Origin: Diplonema japonicum
Taxonomy: Eukaryota > Protista > Euglenozoa: Diplonemea
Reading direction: 5' to 3'
DNA: 64,000 nucleotides
Assembly: GCA_964019335.1 (NCBI GenBank)
Contig: OZ025677.1
Coordinates: forward strand, 186,001 to 250,000
Every line of letters starts with the position of its first letter. The first letter of the stretch is position 1. Positions 7,519-30,180 of the stretch are shown one piece after another. A model generated the notes under the pieces. The model saw nothing but the letters and a program-made list of their open reading frames with translations, made no database searches and was not told where the DNA came from. Both the position numbers and the translations under genes were made by a program.

Positions 7519-8090
7519 TATAACTCCAGTCAGATTTTCAACTGTGGTGGTGAATATAATATTTCACGCTTCACTTTATTTTCACGGTAGATTTCAGGCT
7601 TGTTTTAGGAAGAAAACAGGGGCAGAAATGAAAATTACTTTATGAGTGAATATAAAGTACTTTATATTCACGCTAGCCCTATTTTCACGGGGTTCGGGGG
7701 CGCAAACACGGAAAGAAAATCACCCAAGTGGTTACCACACAGGTCCCAGGTGCTAGTGGGGCAACCTCAGCAATCCAGGCAGCAGTCCCACAGGTCCAGA
7801 CCGAGGTCCTGTCAGCACCCATGGACGCACAGCCCGCACCACACAGGATAGCCTTGACAATCAATATCAACGTCAACCATAAGCACCCCCGATAAAATTT
7901 GTAACTTGTAACTTGTAATACCCCACCCTTTCAAATATGACTGACGTTAAATAAAACAACGGATTTAGTGAAAATAGATCCGATTTTCACTTGTGGTGGC
8001 ATGTTTAACTTGTTGATGTTACTTCGTTCGTGAAGTCTCGTTAACGCGTGAAAATCATACGATCTTATTTTCACTAAATAAATAGTTATT
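7519..8090 (+). mobile_element. Non-autonomous YR/Crypton-like hairpin element (E1)
   Basis: Reverse-complement homolog of 11302-12070. IRs at 7521-7548 and 7922-7949, partly deleted hairpin, terminal TAAATAGTTATT. Retains a YR-like C-terminal tail (LTININVNHK, compare DVNININIRT). Confidence 0.8.
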
Positions 8091-8969
8091 CTTCCAAAAA
8101 GAAGTTACCTCTGTCAGGCAATTCATTTAAAAAAAAGAAGAAGAAATGATAATAATAACTATAATAGGTGAGCTATTCTTTGTTTGTGCGCAATGGTCAC
8201 AAACCTTCCTAATTTAAGAGATCTTTGAAACACGTATCGCTGCCAGCCTTCCTTTTGACAACTACAATAACAAGTGTTTGTGCTCATCAAAAAAAAGAAA
8301 AAAGTTAGCAAAACAAAAATTCAATCCGGTAAGGTGTTTTTTTTTTTTTCTTTTTTTTCTCTCTCTCTTTTTTTTTTTAAATCTTTTTTTTAACCACTAA
8401 ACCCACATGTGATATATGAACAACCACCTGGAGCGCCGCAAAATCGGCAAAATAGTCACAGAAGCCGAAATACGAGCGTCTGAAACTCACCACCCGTCCC
8501 AACTGCTGGGTACTTGCGAAGAGCGTCAACTCCTCCATCAAGTTCAACGGGCTGAAAGAATGCATCGCACCTGCACTACCGAGACTCGAAAGATGTAGGT
8601 TTGGCCGCACCAAACAGCATTTATTCCTGCGAAAATTAAGCAAAATAGGTGCGGCATGGGTCTCAGAAAGTCCTCTGGCTATGAATGTTCCACCTAATGC
8701 CTTTTGAATTTTTTTTTTTAGGAGTTGCTTTCAAAAAATGGACTTTTTTTTCGTTTTTTAGCCTGTGGGCTTAGTGGTTAAGAAAAAAAAAAAGGGAATT
8801 AAAAAAAGGAGGGGGGGGGGGGGGGGGGGGGCAAGAGTGCTCAAACCACTCCTCTTGATTGCTAGATCTATTATTAGATTTTTCTTTTTTTTTTTTTGTA
8901 TTTTCTCCGACGAGCGATCAGGACGTACATTTACACGGAAGATAGCAACAAACAAAAGAATTGTATTCG

Positions 8970-9009
<40 letters not shown>

Positions 9010-9236
9010 GTTTCCCTCTGTGGGAGTGCGTCGTCACTGCGTCCTTTTTTATACATAAACATTATTTTCTTTTTTTTTTTTTTTTATTTCTAAAATAAAT
9101 TTTCTCTATAAAAAAAAAAAAAAAAAAAAAAAAAAATGTATATTGTTCGTATCCCCACCCTCCCCCCTCTCTCTCTCTTAAAGCGCCAAACAGTAAAGGG
9201 TACTTTTTTTTTTTTGTCTCTCACTTTTTTTTTTTT

Positions 9237-10612
9237 TATTTCACAGTTTATTTCCCTCGGCCTAAATTCTCAAAGAGCGGGGAACGTAAAGTAGGGTTTT
9301 TCCCCCCCGGGCAAATAAACTTTTAAGCCAAATTTAACAGGGCGGGGAAATAAACTAACATAATTCTTCCAGCTCTTTTTTTTTTATCAAAGATGCCAAA
9401 AAGCAAGAAGGTCAAGCGCATGGAAGAGATCTATGAATCAAACACATATAAGAACCCTTCCTATGAAAAAGCGTTGACTGCGATGCTCGAGTCAGAGAAC
9501 ATAGCAGGGAAGCCGCGTGAGCAAGATATCGTGAGCTACTTCCAAAGCAGGAGGGAAGCCGGGCTCAAGGCATCGAGCCTCTGGTGTCTTTACTCCAAAT
9601 TGAACGCAACCTTCAAAGCCAAGTACAACTGCAAACTACAAGCTTGGCCTCGTTTGACGTCTTTGTTAAAGTCCTGGGACCGTAACGAAGAGCGTCACGT
9701 GGCTGCCACTTTATCAAGTGACGAGGTTCAAGATTATATAGAACAAAAAAAAGGGACCGCTACCGCCGCTATCGTTGCTTGCATGTTTAGCGGGGGCATG
9801 AGAGCTTGCGAAGTGGTGTCGATGGAAATCAGCGACATTGTTAAGAATCAAGTTGATGGGAGTTTTATCTGCACTGTAGCGCGTTCAAAGACGGGTGGGC
9901 ACACAAAATTCCACATGTCTGGCATTCATGCATCAGCAATGGACCAGTACTTGTTGCTACGACCTAAGAAAGAGACCAAGCGTCTGTTCCTTTCGGAGAG
10001 AGGAACGCCCATTGGCACAAACAAGGTATACAAACTGGGGTGTGGCATCCGTCATCGGAAAGCCCGCCAATGAGTTACGTCACACGCTTTTCGACGTTCT
10101 GCGGCCACAGCTGCTGCTGAAAACGGTGCATCTATCTCCATGATGCAATCACATTTTGGATGGAGAAACACAAGCATGCCAGCAATGTACGTGGAACAGA
10201 GCACAAGCCGTGCGCAACACATGGCAGGACTTTTGAGTCAAATACAGACCAGCCCAGGACCAGGAAGCCCAAGCCAGTCACAGGACGTCAACATCAATAT
10301 CAACATCCGCACACGCCAGGAGTAGATAGTACCCACTCCACCCCTTTTTTCTTTTCTTTTGCCATTTTTATTTTTTCATTCTACAAACAAGCGTGATAGT
10401 CCAGCGTATTCCGGAGTCCACGTCCCGCTCTTTGAGAATTTAGGCCTCGGGAAAATAAACTGTAAATAAAACGTCGTATTCCGGGGTAAAGTAGGGTTTA
10501 CCTTTTCCCTCGACAGATTGTCCTGGCCCCTCGGAACCAATTTTTCCTCGGGAGCCACAATCTGTCTCGTGGAAATAAACCCTACTTTATTGCCCCGGAA
10601 TAAATAGTTATT
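9237..10612 (+). mobile_element. Tyrosine-recombinase (Crypton-like) element E0: IR - YR gene - IR - terminal hairpin
   Basis: ~50-bp IRs at 9237-9287 and 10421-10467 (CAGTTTATTTCCCTCGGCCTAAATTCTCAAAGAGCGGG vs CCCGCTCTTTGAGAATTTAGGCCTCGGGAAAATAAACTG). Hairpin at 10477-10602. Terminus TAAATAGTTATT. Confidence 0.85.
9393..10325 (+). pseudogene. Tyrosine recombinase (phage-integrase fold), interrupted by TGA at 10071-10073
   Basis: All catalytic motifs are present: GGMRACE (R), RSKTG (K), SHAFRRS (HxxR), HFGW, AMYVE (Y). ORFs 9393-10073 and 10140-10325 are in the same frame. Confidence 0.88.
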
Positions 10613-10643
10613 TTTTTTTTTTTTTTTCCCCATACATTTCCCC

Positions 10644-11234
10644 TTACCCCATCCGCTTCATTTCACCGTTTTGTATCGCCTCAAGCAGTTCAGGCTTCAC
10701 TTTAAAAAACCCTGGATACTCCATCAGCAAAGGACACACCGTAGTTTTGATGGGAACCGGTATGACAAGAGGCTTCTGAGAGGCCTTAGCGGTGGTGTGG
10801 ATGTCTTTCGGAGTTTTGAAATCCGGTCTTCTAGAAAGCTGGGCCCATGGGGCAAGGGGTGTGGGAGTGGGCAGGACCTCTACCAGTGAAGGCTTAAGGG
10901 AGTAGGTATTAAGAGATGTTCTTAAGTCCGTGCACATTTCTTCGCCAGATATTCTGAGTAGGATATCGTGCTGTTTAGAATCCTCTCGAAGTTTGAATAA
11001 AACTTGAGTGATCCCCGCATCAGGTGCCATGACCACCTTCGTTATTTCGCCGAACGGGACGAACCTCTTCACATCACCTTTAGTTGTACACACGAACACG
11101 CATAGAGTGGTCACCAGCAGAACCCTCTTTTGAGTACTGAGTTTATGGTTGACCTTGTCACACACCTTGATATATCTCAGTGTGTTGGTGTTGAACATTT
11201 CGAGCTCCGGGGGGACATCTAGTAGTTTATTCAT
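10644..11234 (-). CDS. Short paralog of the TH1/PH-like protein at 3379-4437
   Basis: PPELEMFNTNTLRYIKVCDKVNHKLSTQKRVLLVTTLCVFVC aligns with PRELSKFRNPTLRYIRVCDKVDHAKKTQRRVLSITVACVFVC. Intact 196-aa ORF with ATG. Confidence 0.8.
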   Translation of the reverse strand: MNKLLDVPPELEMFNTNTLRYIKVCDKVNHKLSTQKRVLLVTTLCVFVCTTKGDVKRFVPFGEITKVVMAPDAGITQVLFKLREDSKQHDILLRISGEEMCTDLRTSLNTYSLKPSLVEVLPTPTPLAPWAQLSRRPDFKTPKDIHTTAKASQKPLVIPVPIKTTVCPLLMEYPGFFKVKPELLEAIQNGEMKRMG

Positions 11235-11301: not shown

Positions 11302-12070
11302 AATAACTATTTATTTAGTGAAAATAAGATCGTATGATTTTCACGCGTGGTGGCAGTGGTTTAACGAGTGGGTATATGACTTCACGAGCGAAGCGAGTGC
11401 AGTCATGAATGTCTACTTCACGAGCGAAGCGAGTGAAGTAACATCAACGAGTTAAACATGCCACCACAAGTGAAAATCGGATCTATTTTCACTAAATCCG
11501 TTGTTTTATTTAACGTCAGTCAGATTTGAAAGGGTGGGGCATTACAGGTTACAAGTTACAAGTTACAAATTTTATTGGGGGTGCTTATGGTTGATATTGT
11601 TTGTCAAGGCATATCCTGTGTGGTACGGGCTGTGCGTCCATGGGTGCTGACAGGACCTCGGTCTGGACCTGTGGGGCTGCTGCCTGAGTTGCTGAGGTTG
11701 CCCCACTAGCAGCTGTCACCGCGGCTTGCCAAGCCCTCTCTCCCCTTCTGTTGAGAGAGGCGACCAGATCCTTGAGTGACGTAAAAAGTGAGATTCCCAG
11801 ATTCGAACCGGGGTTTCCAAAACAAGAGGCCTGTGTGGTAACCACTTAGGTGATTTCTTTTCCGTGTTTGCGCCCCCAACCCCTTGCTGTGCAGTGAAAA
11901 TAGGGCAAGCGTGAATATAAAGTACTTTATATTCACTCATAAATTTTCATTTCTGCCCCTGTTTTCTTTCTAAAACAAGCCTGAAATCTGCAATGAAAAT
12001 AAAGTGAAGCGTGAAATAATGTGAAATATTATATTCACTCCCACCCTTGAAAATCTGACTGGAGTTATAT
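11302..12070 (-). mobile_element. Non-autonomous YR/Crypton-like hairpin element (E2) with branched hairpin
   Basis: Starts AATAACTATTTA. Hairpin 11313-11497 has two CACGAGCGAAGCGAGTG arms. 28-bp IRs at 11511-11538 and 12040-12067. Confidence 0.85.
11788..11857 (-). other. tRNA-derived (SINE-head-like) segment inside E2
   Basis: Minus strand has A-box-like CACCTAAGTGGTTA and T-arm CCCGG-TTCGAAT-CTGGG (B box). No convincing acceptor or anticodon stems. Confidence 0.55.
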
Positions 12071-12080
12071 ATAAAAAAAA

Positions 12081-24076: not shown

Positions 24077-24276
24077 TGTATAACAACTGCTCAGTAAGAG
24101 CAGAAGAGAGTAGTGGTAGCATGCAGTGCACAAACAAATGCTAAAAATCAGCTCTTTTTTTTCTTTTTTTTTTTTTTTTTTTTTTTTTTAATTCTGAGCA
24201 GCTCTCTTAAAGAATTTAGGCTGGAAGATATAAATCAGGTTTCACTTTATTTCACGCCCAGACCTGGGTGTGAAAT

Positions 24277-24920
24277 AATAACTATTTATTTAGTGAATAT
24301 AAGATCCTATGATTTCACACGTGGTGGCAGTGGTTTTGACGAGTGAGGTAACTACTTCACGAGCGAAGCGAGTGTTATAACGTTTAACGAGTCAAAACTG
24401 CCACCACAAACCTTCACAAATACGATATTTTAAACGACAGCAAAATTTGAGTGTGTGGGAGGTACAGGTGGTACCAATTACAACAGGTGTCGGATGTGCC
24501 TCGGTAGTGCACATGTTTCCTGCAAACATCAACGCTGCATAAGCGTGGCGGACGATGCCATACCTCGGTGCTAAAGAATTCTGTTATTTGCTCTTGGGCA
24601 AAGATGTTCGCCTTTTTTGTTGACTCGCCTTCTTGGAACCTCTTGAGGGGGACCTTTAGTCGGGGGTGGTCTTGCAACTGCTTGTTGTAATTCCTCTTCA
24701 CAACCGAGTTTAGCCTTGAATAAACCGTCCGGACTGAACTGGCAGCAGGCCTTGCTTGTTCATGTCGCTGAAATGGAGAATAAAATCCTCTTCTTTCGGA
24801 CGGGCCCTTCTTTTCCTTCCTATAATTATGAAACACACAAAAGCGTGCCCATTCCTTTTCGTATGACTCTTGGAAGGGCTGCGTCCGCCTCTTGTGCAGT
24901 CGGGTTCTTGCCCATCCCAA
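24277..24920 (-). mobile_element. YR/Crypton-like element remnant (E3): hairpin end plus N-terminal YR fragment
   Basis: AATAACTATTTATTTAGTG terminus and hairpin 24321-24407. ORF AASSVRTVYSRLNSVVKRNYNKQLQDHPRL aligns with E0 KASSLWCLYSKLNATFKAKYNCKLQAWPRL. Confidence 0.8.
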
Positions 24921-25217
24921 AGGACCCTTGGTAGAAACTCTTGGAGGGTTTTGCTTAAATTAGGCCCAGGAGTGAAATAATATTTCTTATTTTAACGCTA
25001 TCAGAATTTTTTCACTCCTAGGCCTAATTTCTTTTAGAAGCCGGAGCGTGAAAATAAAGTCAGGAGTGAAATAAAGTGAATTCTCATTTTCACTCCCATG
25101 AAAATTTTGGTGGAGTTAAATAAAGTATCTGATTTTTTCCTCATGTTTTTAAGCCAAACGTTGCTGGGCGTGAAAATCAGGTACTTTATTTCACGCCCAC
25201 AGTCATTTTCTAGCAAA

Positions 25218-26226: not shown

Positions 26227-27305
26227 AATGACTATTTACTAAATAAAAATCAGATTACCTGATTTTTACGAAGAATTTTTTTTTTCACGAGTAGTTGAAT
26301 TTCACGAGCGAAGCGAGTGAAATTCAAAAAAACGAGTGGCTGATTTTTATCTTCTAAAGTATGATATTTTACTTAATTTTTGCAAAGTTAAATGAGGAAA
26401 TTTCGGACACTGTAAACCCTTTATGTTCACTTCTGCGAAATATTCACATTGATGTCAAAACTAAGCCTGATTGCCGAAGATGATGTCAAATTGACAGAAT
26501 TCTGTAGGTTTTGTGTAATTTGTGTCGGCACTTGATCATCGCTCTTCAGAAACTGCTGGTTTTGTGCAGGGGCTTGATCAGATCTGACTTCCAGCCAAAA
26601 TAGCAGGTTCCTTCATCAACAAGGTATCGTGCAAAAGAACGCCTGTATGCATGGCCAGTGTAATTTTCGGCATTTGCCGGCCTCAGGTGTGATGCTTGGT
26701 GGCTCGGAAACCTGGTAAAGTGTGTTTATGCCTCTTTTGCCTCGGATACCTGGCTGTGTTTTGGGCAGGTTGGGTTACGTCTCATATTTTGCGAACCAGT
26801 TAATTTATATGTCGAGTGACGTTTGTAAAAGCGCAACATGCTGTAGCTCAGTGGTAGCTCAGTGGTAGCTCAGTGGTAGCTCAGTGGTAGCTCAGTGGTA
26901 GCTCAGTGGTAGCTCAGTGGTAGCTCAGTGGTAGCTCAGTGGTTATGTCGTCGCACTCGTCTCCTGGAGACGCCAGATCAAATCCCGGACCTCGAACTTT
27001 TTCGATAAAATCGGGGTCAAAAAAACGGTCCCTCCCCTGAAACCCTGGCCGAGGGTCCTGACCACTGACCTACGGCGGTGTTAGCGGCCGCCAGATGCAA
27101 AAAATGAAGACGAATACCGAAAAAGCCCGAAAATTGCTCAGAGTAAAAATCAGATTTTACTTTGCATTTACTGCACTTTTTTAAGCCAAATTCGGCCTAT
27201 TACTTTGCATTTATTCTTCACTTTGCATTTACTCGTGAACGGCAAAGTGATTTCTGATTTTTATGGCCCTTTAGAAATTTCCTTATGTAACTTTGCGGAA
27301 TTAAG

Positions 27306-27309
<4 letters not shown>
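26227..27309 (-). mobile_element. Non-autonomous YR/Crypton-like hairpin element (E4), different subfamily
   Basis: Terminus AATGACTATTTA. Hairpin core TTGAATTTCACGAGCGAAGCGAGTGAAATTCAA (26295-26327). ~34-bp IRs at 26370-26404 and 27274-27307. Confidence 0.75.
26844..26942 (+). repeat. 9 x 11-bp perfect tandem repeat TAGCTCAGTGG (tRNA A-box)
   Basis: Counted directly. Followed by a degenerate B-box AGATCAAATCCC at about 26975-26986. Confidence 0.9.
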
Positions 27310-29829: not shown

Positions 29830-30180
29830 TTTTATTTCACGGTTGCCAGAATTTCGAGTTAAACCCGCCACCCACAAGTGAAATAATGCCACTTCTTTTC
29901 ATTTAATATGTTGTTTTATTTAATAAGAGCCGGGTTTGAAAGGGTGGGGTACAGGTTACAAGAAGAAATCAAAACTGAGAGGCTCAAGTTACCAGTTCTC
30001 GTTAGTTTTAACATTAAAATAGGTGCAGGAGTGACATAATGTAACATTATATCACTCCTGTACATTATGTCACTCCTGGGCCTTATTTCTCTATAAACTG
30101 GGAGTGAAAATAAAGTTGAGCGTGATATAAGGTGAAATCTTATTTTCACGCCCTTGAAAAACTGGCTTGAATTAAATAAC
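29830..30180 (-). mobile_element. Short non-autonomous YR/Crypton-like derivative (E5)
   Basis: Co-linear with E2 (GAGTTAAAC...CCACAAGTGAAA...GTTGTTTTATTTAA...TTTGAAAGGGTGGGG and far end CCCTTGAAAA). Internal palindrome at 30024-30064. Confidence 0.7.

What the first reader, a model, noticed from the sequence alone, without database searches (positions are those of the whole stretch)
9237..10612. Tyrosine-recombinase element family with strand-specific ssDNA hairpins built on tandem sheared G.A pairs (integron attC-like logic in a eukaryote)
Seen: E0 (9237-10612), E1 (7519-8090), E2 (11302-12070), E3 (24277-), E4 (26227-27309) and E5 (29830-30180) share, fully or in part, IR - cargo - IR - long hairpin - TAAATAGTTATT. 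Stems are repeatedly interrupted by the same mismatch, 5'-GA opposite 5'-GA. On the E0 bottom strand these are TTCC-GA-GG/CC-GA-GGAA and CTGTC-GA/GA-GACAG, and in the IRs TTCCC-GA-GGCC/GGCC-GA-GGGAA. E2 has TTTAAC-GA-GT/AC-GA-GTTAAA. E3 has the compensatory variant TTTTGAC-GA-GT/AC-GA-GTCAAAA. E2, E3 and E4 share the apex CAC-GA-GC-GAA-GC-GA-GTG. Relative to the terminus, the GA strand is always the one that is antisense to the YR in E0. Established: d(GCGAAGC) mini-hairpins and tandem sheared G.A pairs are very stable in ssDNA, while the complementary TC/TC strand is not. Integron IntI and XerCD on CTXphi act on folded single strands, whereas Cryptons are usually modelled with dsDNA circles. 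Inference: this family mobilises through a folded ssDNA substrate recognised by its YR. Cryptons themselves are known; the claimed novelty is the conserved strand-asymmetric structure.
Basis: partly seen in the sequence, partly recalled or inferred. Interest (0 to 1): 0.88.

Follow-up and report, generated by a model that had tools for sequence, protein, structure and literature searches.

The report
Recombinase transposons with a conserved mismatched hairpin
A marine protist (Diplonema japonicum) carries families of small Crypton-like jumping genes whose right end holds a long DNA palindrome with a fixed set of G.A-type mismatches and a famously stable GCGAAGC tip. This points to folded DNA having a role, but the claimed strict strand specificity and single-strand mechanism are not borne out.

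Summary
E0 (9237-10612) is a decayed copy of a tyrosine-recombinase (YR) transposon of Diplonema japonicum. At least 10 near-full copies exist, all of them broken, plus non-autonomous families (A-G here) that share its layout. The layout is a T-run, the left end, an inverted repeat (IR), the cargo, a second IR, a 130-180 nt imperfect palindrome, and the terminus AAATAGTTATT.

Stems covary between families. Nearly every 2x2 internal loop is C-TC-G/C-TC-G, which reads C-GA-G/C-GA-G on the other strand. The centre is GC-TTC-GC, or GCGAAGC on the other strand. Of 241 predicted 2x2 loops in 125 hairpins, 205 are of this type.

The "always the same strand" claim fails genome-wide. E0's own family mostly carries the apex in the opposite orientation, and inner segments are flipped in at least eight lineages. 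The orientation tally by pattern is 89:10, and about one third of a less biased sample has a flip.

The element boundary lies 10-15 nt outside the hairpin. A nested insertion shows no target duplication and fits conservative recombination across a TTATTT overlap. The joined ends would form a classical inverted-repeat core.

My reading is a Crypton-like element with a new, conserved folded-DNA accessory module. A single-stranded attC-like substrate is possible but unsupported. Other first-stage readers of this scan noted the same families elsewhere in this genome.

The parts
9237..10612 (+). E0: a decayed copy of the YR-encoding element (IR, YR pseudogene, IR, hairpin, terminus)
   Evidence: At least 10 near-full copies at 86-94% identity, plus internal-deletion derivatives, share these boundaries.
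9225..9236 (+). T-run abutting the left end (the target side)
   Evidence: About 95% of copies in all families have a T-run immediately 5' of the left end.
9234..9281 (+). Left inverted repeat (IR-L), containing TTCCC-TC-GGCC
   Evidence: the repeat finder I1: 48 nt, 81% complementary to 10424-10471.
9393..10325 (+). Tyrosine-recombinase pseudogene (TGA at 10071-10073 inside a frameshifted stretch, about 10040-10075)
   Evidence: Both halves match PF00589. It is 94-97% identical to D. japonicum transcript proteins P0001/P0002. P0001 has the catalytic R, HxxR, W and Y when aligned to XerA.
10424..10471 (+). Right inverted repeat (IR-R), containing GGCC-TC-GGGAA
10477..10602 (.). Imperfect palindrome (hairpin) with two C-TC-G/C-TC-G loops. 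The 30-nt apex module is deleted in this copy.
   Evidence: z about -9.4. The apex is present in sister copies.
10599..10612 (+). Conserved right terminus AATAAATAGTTATT
   Evidence: Identical in families A-D and E0. A T-run follows at 10613-10629.
7519..8090 (+). E1: a family A non-autonomous element with a degenerate hairpin (apex lost)
   Evidence: The same ends as family A.
11302..12072 (-). E2: a family A non-autonomous element. The Y-shaped hairpin at 11313-11497 has two apices.
   Evidence: GA strand -47.5, TC strand -44.0 kcal/mol.
24277..25121 (-). E3: a family B element carrying an N-terminal YR remnant, inserted in an iteron of another element
   Evidence: The host reads GGGTGTGAAAT^AAAGTATCTG, against the paralogous iteron GGGCGTGAAATAAAGTACCTG.
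24190..24276 (+). Left part of the host element E3h (it resumes at 25122 and runs to about 25560). This is a different YR family, with 61 genomic matches.
26227..27309 (-). E4: a family D element with terminus TAGTCATT and a hairpin with three C-GA-G/C-GA-G loops below the apex pair
29830..30180 (-). E5: a truncated family C element that lacks the terminus and half of the hairpin
   Evidence: compared with family C copies.

Best explanation
E0 and its partners are Crypton-like DNA transposons of Diplonema japonicum that are moved by a Xer-type tyrosine recombinase.

Inferred integration mechanism: the two ends are joined, presumably in an excised circle. The joint forms an inverted-repeat core. 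In family A this is AGTTAT-TTAT-ATAACT, and in E0 it is GGAATAAATAG-TTATTATTTC-ACAGTTTATTTCC. The core surrounds a T-rich overlap of about TTATTT. The recombinase exchanges strands with T-rich targets, so the element sits 3' of a T-run in one orientation and makes no target duplication.

The 130-180 nt palindrome just inside the right end is a conserved accessory module and not the crossover site. Its stems co-vary, while the C-TC-G/C-TC-G loops and the GC-TTC-GC centre stay fixed. On the complementary strand these are C-GA-G tandem G.A pairs and the GCGAAGC mini-hairpin.

The module most likely works as folded DNA that nucleates from its centre. This could be a cruciform in a supercoiled circle, or a hairpin in transiently single-stranded DNA. 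It would then act as an architectural or recognition platform, since its arms carry the iterated GTGAAA(A)TA / GGGAAATAAA motifs, or possibly as a priming signal.

Strand identity is not essential, because inner segments occur in both orientations.

Shown here: the family, the anatomy, the conservation pattern, the flips, the T-run association, and one insertion without a target duplication. Inferred: the circle, the core and overlap, and the folding in vivo.
For: - The YR domain and catalytic residues are present. E0 holds no other ORF or domain.
- Copies and boundaries are defined.
- The E3 junctions fit J = AAATAG-TTA-[TTATTT]-AACTCC recombining with T = GATAC-T-[TTATTT]-CACACC, with no gain or loss relative to a paralogous iteron.
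- About 14 of 76 right junctions keep TTATT-ATT(T). The rest read TTATT-T(n), as expected if the overlap derives from either partner.
- The hairpin ends 10-15 nt before the terminus in all families.
- At least 15 compensatory pairs are seen among 5 families.
- 205 of 241 predicted 2x2 loops are CTCG/CTCG or CGAG/CGAG.
- CTCG is not enriched outside the palindromes.
- The same nested design with unrelated stems occurs in metagenome contigs L146 and L154.
- GCGAAGC has exceptional stability and is used at ssDNA phage origins (PMC13037366).
- Flips occur in families A, B, C', E0, F and G.
Against: - No circle junction, empty site or excision was seen. Only Logan unitigs were available, and no tandem junction exists in the assembly.
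- The overlap model rests on a single nested insertion plus flank statistics.
- Co-variation of inverted repeats is also expected if both arms simply bind the same protein as duplex DNA.
- No intact E0-family YR exists in the assembly. The 'intact' transcript protein could be a Trinity chimera.
- The autonomous partner of families A-D was not examined.
- The strong orientation bias in the high-copy families (89:10) could still mean that one strand matters.
Confidence: 0.55

Rival explanations
1. The recombinase acts on a folded single strand (integron attC or CTX-phage logic), with the tandem G.A pairs and the GCGAAGC tip marking the reactive strand.
For: - The GA strand is predicted to be more stable in all 38 family A copies (mean 3.65 kcal/mol) and in most B, C and D copies.
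- The orientation bias is 89:10.
- Insertion is orientation-specific and makes no duplication.
- The context is the optimal C-GA-G, and the mini-hairpin is exact (PMC13037366).
- Families A and C even read GTTTAAC/GTTAAAC next to the loop, like the attC R boxes. This comparison rests on my own knowledge and may be coincidence.
Against: - The crossover lies outside the hairpin.
- One strand often carries both GA/GA and TC/TC loops. Examples are the E0 majority, L138, L144, L056, L100 and L137.
- Flipped variants have multiplied to several loci.
- The joined ends form an ordinary duplex core.
- The stem energy of -40 to -60 kcal/mol dwarfs the 1-4 kcal/mol asymmetry.
Confidence: 0.2
2. The module acts purely as duplex DNA. 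The palindrome is a symmetric array of protein-binding sites (iterons), CTCG is a short directional duplex motif kept in the same orientation on both arms, and the DNA never folds.
For: - The arms contain the same iterated motifs that occur in IR-L and IR-R and near the left end.
- Inverted binding sites co-vary without any folding.
- E0's IR arms, 1.1 kb apart, show the same TC/TC feature.
Against: - Only four bases (CTCG) are constant, and their flanks follow pairing, not a shared direct motif.
- CTCG is not enriched elsewhere in the elements.
- A 3-nt centre that exactly matches the most stable known DNA mini-hairpin, kept in every family and in foreign contigs, has no reason to exist in a duplex-only model.
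- Flipping CTCG to CGAG is tolerated.
Confidence: 0.13
3. The hairpin acts in RNA. It could sit in the 3' UTR of the YR mRNA or in an antisense or read-through transcript, for example for stability, for 3'-end formation next to the T-run, or as a small-RNA precursor. Tandem G.A pairs and GAA loops are also stable in RNA.
For: - In the only coding family seen here, the apex is mostly in the GA form on the mRNA-sense strand.
- Transcripts of the family exist.
Against: - The lower loops are UC/UC on that same RNA.
- Non-coding families keep the module in the other orientation.
- There is no Rfam match.
- The module always sits at a fixed distance from the DNA terminus.
Confidence: 0.07
4. The elements are not mobilised by the YR at all. 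They would move either by rolling-circle or HUH-type transposition (a subterminal 3' hairpin as in Helitron or IS200/IS605), or as poly(A)-tailed retrocopies read on the opposite strand.
For: - The hairpin lies 10-15 nt from the 3' end, there is no target duplication, and orientation is fixed.
- On the other strand the left T-run looks like a poly(A) tail of variable length.
Against: - No HUH or RT ORF occurs in any element examined.
- Non-autonomous families carry YR gene remnants.
- E3 was inserted with only TTT, so with no tail, and with no duplication.
Confidence: 0.04

Closest known systems
Crypton DNA transposons (Goodwin 2003; Kojima & Jurka 2011, PMC3212892)
   Same: They have a single YR gene and no reverse transcriptase. 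Their ends carry short direct repeats (here TTATTT-like) that reflect microhomology with the target rather than a true duplication. A circular intermediate is presumed.
   Different: Described Cryptons lack TIRs, subterminal IRs and hairpins. These elements have a 48-nt IR pair, iterated motifs, 6-bp terminal inverted repeats and a conserved 130-180 nt mismatched palindrome. They target T-runs and have large non-autonomous families. No Crypton has been reported from diplonemids in the searched library.
Integron attC sites and the CTX-phage attP(+) site (folded single-strand substrates of IntI / XerCD)
   Same: A YR enzyme is paired with an imperfect palindrome whose irregularities are conserved while the stems vary. 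One strand is predicted to fold better.
   Different: In those systems the crossover lies inside the folded stem and strand choice is strict. Here the boundary lies outside the hairpin, and the irregularities occur in both orientations, even within one hairpin.
Subterminal hairpins of Helitrons and IS200/IS605 (HUH enzymes)
   Same: The hairpin lies about 10-15 nt from the 3' end, insertion makes no duplication next to a short T-rich or AT motif, and orientation is fixed.
   Different: No HUH or Rep gene is present and the encoded enzyme is a YR. The hairpin is ten times longer and carries a fixed mismatch code.
AAV/parvovirus ITRs (flip/flop, T-shaped hairpins) and hairpin-mediated minute inversions of chloroplast DNA (from my own knowledge)
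   Same: Double-apex copies fold into a Y or T shape, and inner palindromic segments exist in two inverted states.
   Different: The module is internal to chromosomal DNA and not at a molecular end. Only inner segments flip, and independently of each other, as expected for inversions between the flanking stem arms rather than for hairpin transfer.

Membership tests
Tyrosine recombinase superfamily (PF00589) | A catalytic domain with R, K, HxxR, H/W and Y | tested here: met
   PF00589 scores E = 5e-19 for P0001, and both halves of the E0 ORF match. R (GMRACE), HTFRRSAAT, FGW and MY align with XerA 5hxy. In E0 itself the gene is broken.
Crypton | A YR is the only mobility gene, with no RT/RNase H | tested here: met
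   E0 (1376 bp) holds one YR ORF and no other Pfam hit. The non-autonomous relatives carry only YR remnants.
Crypton | No terminal inverted or long terminal repeats | tested here: not met
   A 48-nt IR pair, a 126-180 nt palindrome and 6-bp terminal inverted repeats (ATAACT/AGTTAT in families A and B) are present.
Crypton | Short (4-6 bp) direct repeats at both termini that match the target (recombination microhomology) | tested here: inconclusive
   TTATTT stands at both junctions of E3, and the model reproduces both junctions. In most copies the T-runs blur the boundary. Only one inferred empty site is available.
Crypton | The YR falls within the CryptonF/S/A/I clades | not testable with these tools
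   No Repbase reference sequences were available. The nearest relatives are unnamed proteins from diplonemids, a coral and a beetle at no more than 38% identity.
DIRS/Ngaro/VIPER YR retroelements | RT/RNase H genes and split or inverted terminal repeats with an internal complementary region | tested here: not met
   No RT is present. The element is only 0.7-1.4 kb long.
attC / CTX-type folded single-strand recombination site | The crossover point lies within the folded stem | tested here: not met
   The element boundary lies 10-15 nt 3' of the hairpin base in all families.
attC / CTX-type folded single-strand recombination site | Structural marks are conserved on one defined strand | tested here: not met
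   The apex orientation tally is 89 against 10. The E0 family is mostly reversed, mixed GA and TC loops occur on one strand, and 11 of 34 elements in a less biased sample have a flip.
attC / CTX-type folded single-strand recombination site | The recombinase binds or cleaves single-stranded folded DNA | not testable with these tools
   This needs biochemistry.
HUH (Helitron, IS200/IS605) hairpin-ended transposons | A Rep/HUH endonuclease is encoded | tested here: not met
   No such ORF or domain occurs in E0, in E3 or in the flanks.

The most novel reading that the evidence does not exclude
A eukaryotic tyrosine recombinase recognises a folded DNA module (a hairpin or cruciform) built on tandem sheared G.A pairs and a GCGAAGC mini-hairpin, and transposition passes through, or is licensed by, single-stranded or extruded DNA. 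The flip/flop states and the occurrence of the same module in unrelated metagenome contigs would then mark a widespread and so far undescribed class of structure-dependent YR elements.
Probability: 0.22. Interest if true: 0.85.

Novelty: new variant of a known kind. Interest (0 to 1): 0.6.

Why it matters
Cryptons are the least understood class of eukaryotic DNA transposons. No termini rules, no biochemistry and no intermediates are established for them.

This system offers several things:
- sharply defined ends;
- a predicted core site and overlap;
- abundant, recently amplified non-autonomous families;
- a conserved non-B-DNA module with a simple 'code' (C-GA-G loops and a GCGAAGC tip) that can be mutated, flipped or made perfect.

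It therefore makes the question 'do eukaryotic YR transposons use DNA structure?' directly testable. It would also be a natural example of the d(GCGAAGC) mini-hairpin under selection in a eukaryotic genome. If the module proves dispensable, this is still the first Crypton-like family described in Euglenozoa, with unusual T-run targeting.

Tried and rejected
- Reads: only Logan unitigs were offered. No circle junction, excision or empty site was visible.
The intact 429-440 aa YR loci and other copies of the E3 host element could therefore not be fetched.
- A search for an uninterrupted copy of the L075 target found nothing. A search for tandem or joined ends in the assembly also found nothing.
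- The retrocopy (poly-A tail) idea was rejected, because E3 was inserted next to only TTT and without a duplication.
- The HUH idea was rejected for lack of any such ORF.
- CTCG as a general duplex motif is not enriched outside the palindromes.
- The within-family conservation test shows no excess conservation, but it is uninformative because inserted copies decay neutrally.
- No tRNA and no Rfam family was found in 7000-31000.
- tblastn of YR proteins against the 11 metagenome contigs gave no hit.
- The tree of E0 copies is star-like. The flipped copies L002, L004 and L009 are not clearly monophyletic, with weak support.
Full report
**What is there**

The window is part of contig C30 of a 62.5-Mb assembly. 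The E0 recombinase is 94-97% identical to proteins from the Diplonema japonicum transcriptome in EukProt. A 62.3-Mb PacBio HiFi assembly of D. japonicum YPF1604 has been published (PMC13598402). The host is therefore this diplonemid, a member of the Euglenozoa.

E0 (9237-10612) has the following parts:
- a T-run on its left flank;
- a 48-nt inverted repeat, 9234-9281 and 10424-10471, 81% complementary;
- a YR ORF at 9393-10325, both halves of which match PF00589;
- a 126-nt imperfect palindrome at 10477-10602 (-40.0 and -40.8 kcal/mol, z about -9.4);
- the terminus AATAAATAGTTATT, followed by a T-run.

The ORF is broken by a locally shifted frame that contains a TGA at 10071. The transcript-derived protein P0001 (285 aa) has R, HxxR, W and Y aligned with XerA. 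No genomic copy of this family is intact, so P0001 may be a chimeric assembly.

**A family, and several sister families**

The genome holds at least 10 near-full E0 copies at 86-94% identity. The differences are mostly indels, and substitution distances are about 1-3%. There are also internal-deletion derivatives down to about 150 bp that keep the T-run, a few left-end bases, the hairpin and the terminus.

I fetched 74 further loci through the apex-plus-terminus pattern and 40 through the apex alone. These define non-autonomous families:
- A: includes E1 and E2, about 770 bp;
- B: includes E3, about 850 bp, with an N-terminal YR remnant;
- C and C';
- D: includes E4;
- F and G.

All of them share the layout T-run, left end, IR-L, cargo, IR-R, palindrome, and a 10-15 nt tail ending in AAATAG(T/C)(T/C)ATT. 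Iterated GTGAAA(A)TA motifs (GGGAAATAAA in E0 and F) occur in the IRs and in the palindrome arms.

**The mismatch 'code' is real**

I folded 125 oriented hairpins with DNA parameters. This gave 241 predicted 2x2 internal loops. Of these, 190 are CTCG/CTCG on the terminus strand and 15 are CGAG/CGAG. The remainder are scattered, mostly in mutated copies or in upstream sequence. The apical loops are C-TTC-G in 105 cases and C-GAA-G in 13.

Across representatives of eight families the stems differ. Examples are TTTAAC, TTTTGAC, GGGTTTAAC, TTTTTAC, TTCAC, CTGTC and TCC. The loop is always closed by C and G. A five-family alignment shows at least 15 pairs with compensatory changes.

The 12-mer GAGCGAAGCGAG occurs 286 times in the genome, against about 7 expected.

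On the complementary strand the features are tandem G.A mismatches in a C-GA-G context. From my own knowledge, Y-GA-R is the context that favours sheared pairs. The centre becomes d(GCGAAGC), whose Tm is 76.5 C and which recurs at single-strand initiation sites of phage and plasmid origins (PMC13037366).

CTCG is not enriched outside the palindromes.

A composite pattern scan of metagenomes found contigs L146 and L154 with unrelated stems but the same nested loops and centre. It also found tandem arrays of the apex module in other contigs, some of them GC-rich. The pattern itself demanded the CTCG words, so only the surrounding palindromy is independent evidence.

**Strand asymmetry is a tendency, not a rule**

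E0 lacks 30 nt at its apex. Its sisters carry ACC-GA-GC-GAA-GC-GA-GGT on the YR-sense (terminus) strand in 8-9 copies. The reverse complement is found in L002, L004, L009 and L019. The two lower loops stay TC/TC on that strand throughout. One strand therefore carries both kinds of loop.

Genome-wide, the TC form of the apex lies on the terminus strand in 89 pattern hits and the GA form in 10.

Flips elsewhere:
- family A: L060 and L113;
- family B: L056, L100 and L137, which share one configuration at three loci, so it either transposed or was inherited;
- family C': L114, L121 and L054;
- family F: L135, L138 and L141, against L132-134 and L140;
- family G: L119, L130 and L136, where the apex and the next loop are flipped together, against L123. 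L144 is mixed.

In the sample chosen without regard to orientation (L105-L144), 23 elements are 'normal' and 11 have at least one flipped module.

Flips always change both loop sides and the centre together. They are therefore small inversions between the perfectly paired stem arms, and not point changes.

The predicted stability favours the GA strand by 3.65 kcal/mol in family A (38 of 38 copies), by about 2 kcal/mol in B-D and by 0.9 in E0. This is small against totals of -40 to -60 kcal/mol.

Within family A the lower CTCG columns vary as much as other columns, 2.0% against 1.55%, with a permutation fraction of 0.78. It is a weak test, however, because inserted copies decay neutrally. The informative signal is the conservation between families.

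**How the elements insert**

The left flank is a T-run in about 95% of copies. The right flank begins with T's in most copies and with ATT(T) in about 14 of 76.

E3 sits inside an iteron of another element (E3h). The host reads GGGTGTGAAAT^AAAGTATCTG, and a paralogous iteron reads GGGCGTGAAATAAAGTACCTG. Nothing was duplicated or lost.

Both E3 junctions are reproduced by conservative exchange between a joined-end site, AAATAG-TTA-[TTATTT]-AACTCC, and the target, GATAC-T-[TTATTT]-CACACC.

Joining the ends also creates an inverted-repeat core. In family A this is AGTTAT-TTAT-ATAACT. In E0 it is GGAATAAATAG-TTATTATTTC-ACAGTTTATTTCC.

This is the classical arrangement for YR elements and agrees with the Crypton model of short terminal direct repeats as recombination substrates (PMC3212892, PMC13465315). 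The crossover therefore lies outside the palindrome, unlike attC or CTX attP.

**What the palindrome may do**

Three observations argue that the DNA folds:
- the centre is an exact match to the most stable known DNA mini-hairpin;
- the loops are in the optimal context for stable G.A pairs;
- the stems co-vary, and the design recurs in foreign contigs.

A stable centre would nucleate cruciform extrusion in a supercoiled circle, or a hairpin in transient single strands. The folded arms would present the iterons in a fixed geometry, or the centre could serve as a priming signal.

A caveat applies. Inverted protein-binding sites also co-vary, so folding is inferred and not shown.

An RNA-level role, HUH-type transposition and retroposition were considered and ranked low. 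The rival explanations give the reasons.

**Comparison and verdict**

These are YR-only DNA transposons that fit the Crypton concept in gene content and in terminal microhomology. They depart from every described Crypton in four ways: IRs, terminal inverted hexamers, T-run targeting, and a long conserved mismatched palindrome. No such element is reported for diplonemids in the searched literature.

I class the finding as a new variant of a known kind. The strand-specific single-strand mechanism is not supported by what could be tested, but it is not excluded either.

**Limits**

- Only assembled unitigs, and no raw reads, could be laid on the window.
- Other first-stage notes of this scan describe the same families elsewhere in this genome.

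Noticed in passing
L002, L004, L009, L019 against L003, L006-L008, L011-L014 (E0 family); L056/L100/L137; L060; L113; L135/L138/L141; L119/L130/L136; L144: Inner segments of the palindromes exist in two inverted states (flip/flop). Sometimes only the apex is flipped, and sometimes the apex together with the next loop. At least 8 independent lineages show this.
   Followed up: yes
window 11380-11440 (E2) and many family A, B and C copies: A 36-nt duplication gives two apical mini-hairpins, so the module folds into a Y or T shape reminiscent of AAV ITRs. When the two apices have opposite orientation they pair with each other into a longer perfect stem (-61 against -46 kcal/mol).
   Followed up: partly
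L146:1225-1415(-), L154:12-170(+); also L145, L147, L148, L150, L152, L153, L155: Metagenome contigs from unknown organisms carry the same nested CTCG/CTCG loops and the GC-TTC-GC centre with unrelated stems. Other contigs, some with 56-69% GC, carry tandem arrays of the 17-nt apex module next to coding-like sequence. No YR is encoded on these short contigs.
   Followed up: partly
window 24190-24276 and 25122 to about 25560: E3 is nested in a second YR-element family (E3h), which has its own N-terminal YR remnant (MAYRKEWERFCTYH...). The 5' part of this family has 61 matches in the genome.
   Followed up: partly
G000 C7:842551-843348, C73:317821-318618, C60:185386-186180, C36:2558-3355: Uninterrupted ORFs of 429-440 aa that are 30-31% identical to the E0-family YR. 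They are candidate autonomous partners of families A-D and were not fetched.
   Followed up: no
window about 26843-26943 (inside E4): About nine tandem copies of an 11-nt unit, GTAGCTCAGTG, which resembles a tRNA D-arm. A T-arm-like GGTTCGAATC segment lies in the E1/E2 cargo at about 11790-11850. ARAGORN and Rfam call nothing there.
   Followed up: partly
window 8330-9240: Very long homopolymer runs occur between the elements: T of about 45, A of about 30, G of about 24, and several T runs of 15-20. Such runs are the preferred insertion sites.
   Followed up: no
L055, L112, L119 (flanks): Another repeat family ends in ...CGTTTTACAG and is rich in CCGGAC/GTCCGG palindromes. It is inserted into the termini of hairpin elements.
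   Followed up: no
Families A, B, C, C', G: outer stem CACTTGTGG / CCACGCGTG: A second conserved non-Watson-Crick spot (T.C plus T.G) is kept in one orientation relative to the terminus, even where the inner segments are flipped.
   Followed up: partly
Families A and C: GTTTAAC-TC-GT / AC-TC-GTTAAAC: The stems next to the lower loop match the integron attC core consensus RYYYAAC / GTTRRRY (recalled from my own knowledge). Families B, D, E0 and F do not match, so this is probably coincidence.
   Followed up: no
E0-family copies L001-L013: The copies differ mainly by many small and medium indels, while substitution distances are only about 1-3%. This is an unusual decay pattern for a HiFi assembly.
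   Followed up: no
window 10644-11234 (-): A 196-aa ORF between E0 and E2 has a weak match to the myosin TH1 domain (E = 2e-4, below the Pfam cutoff).
   Followed up: no
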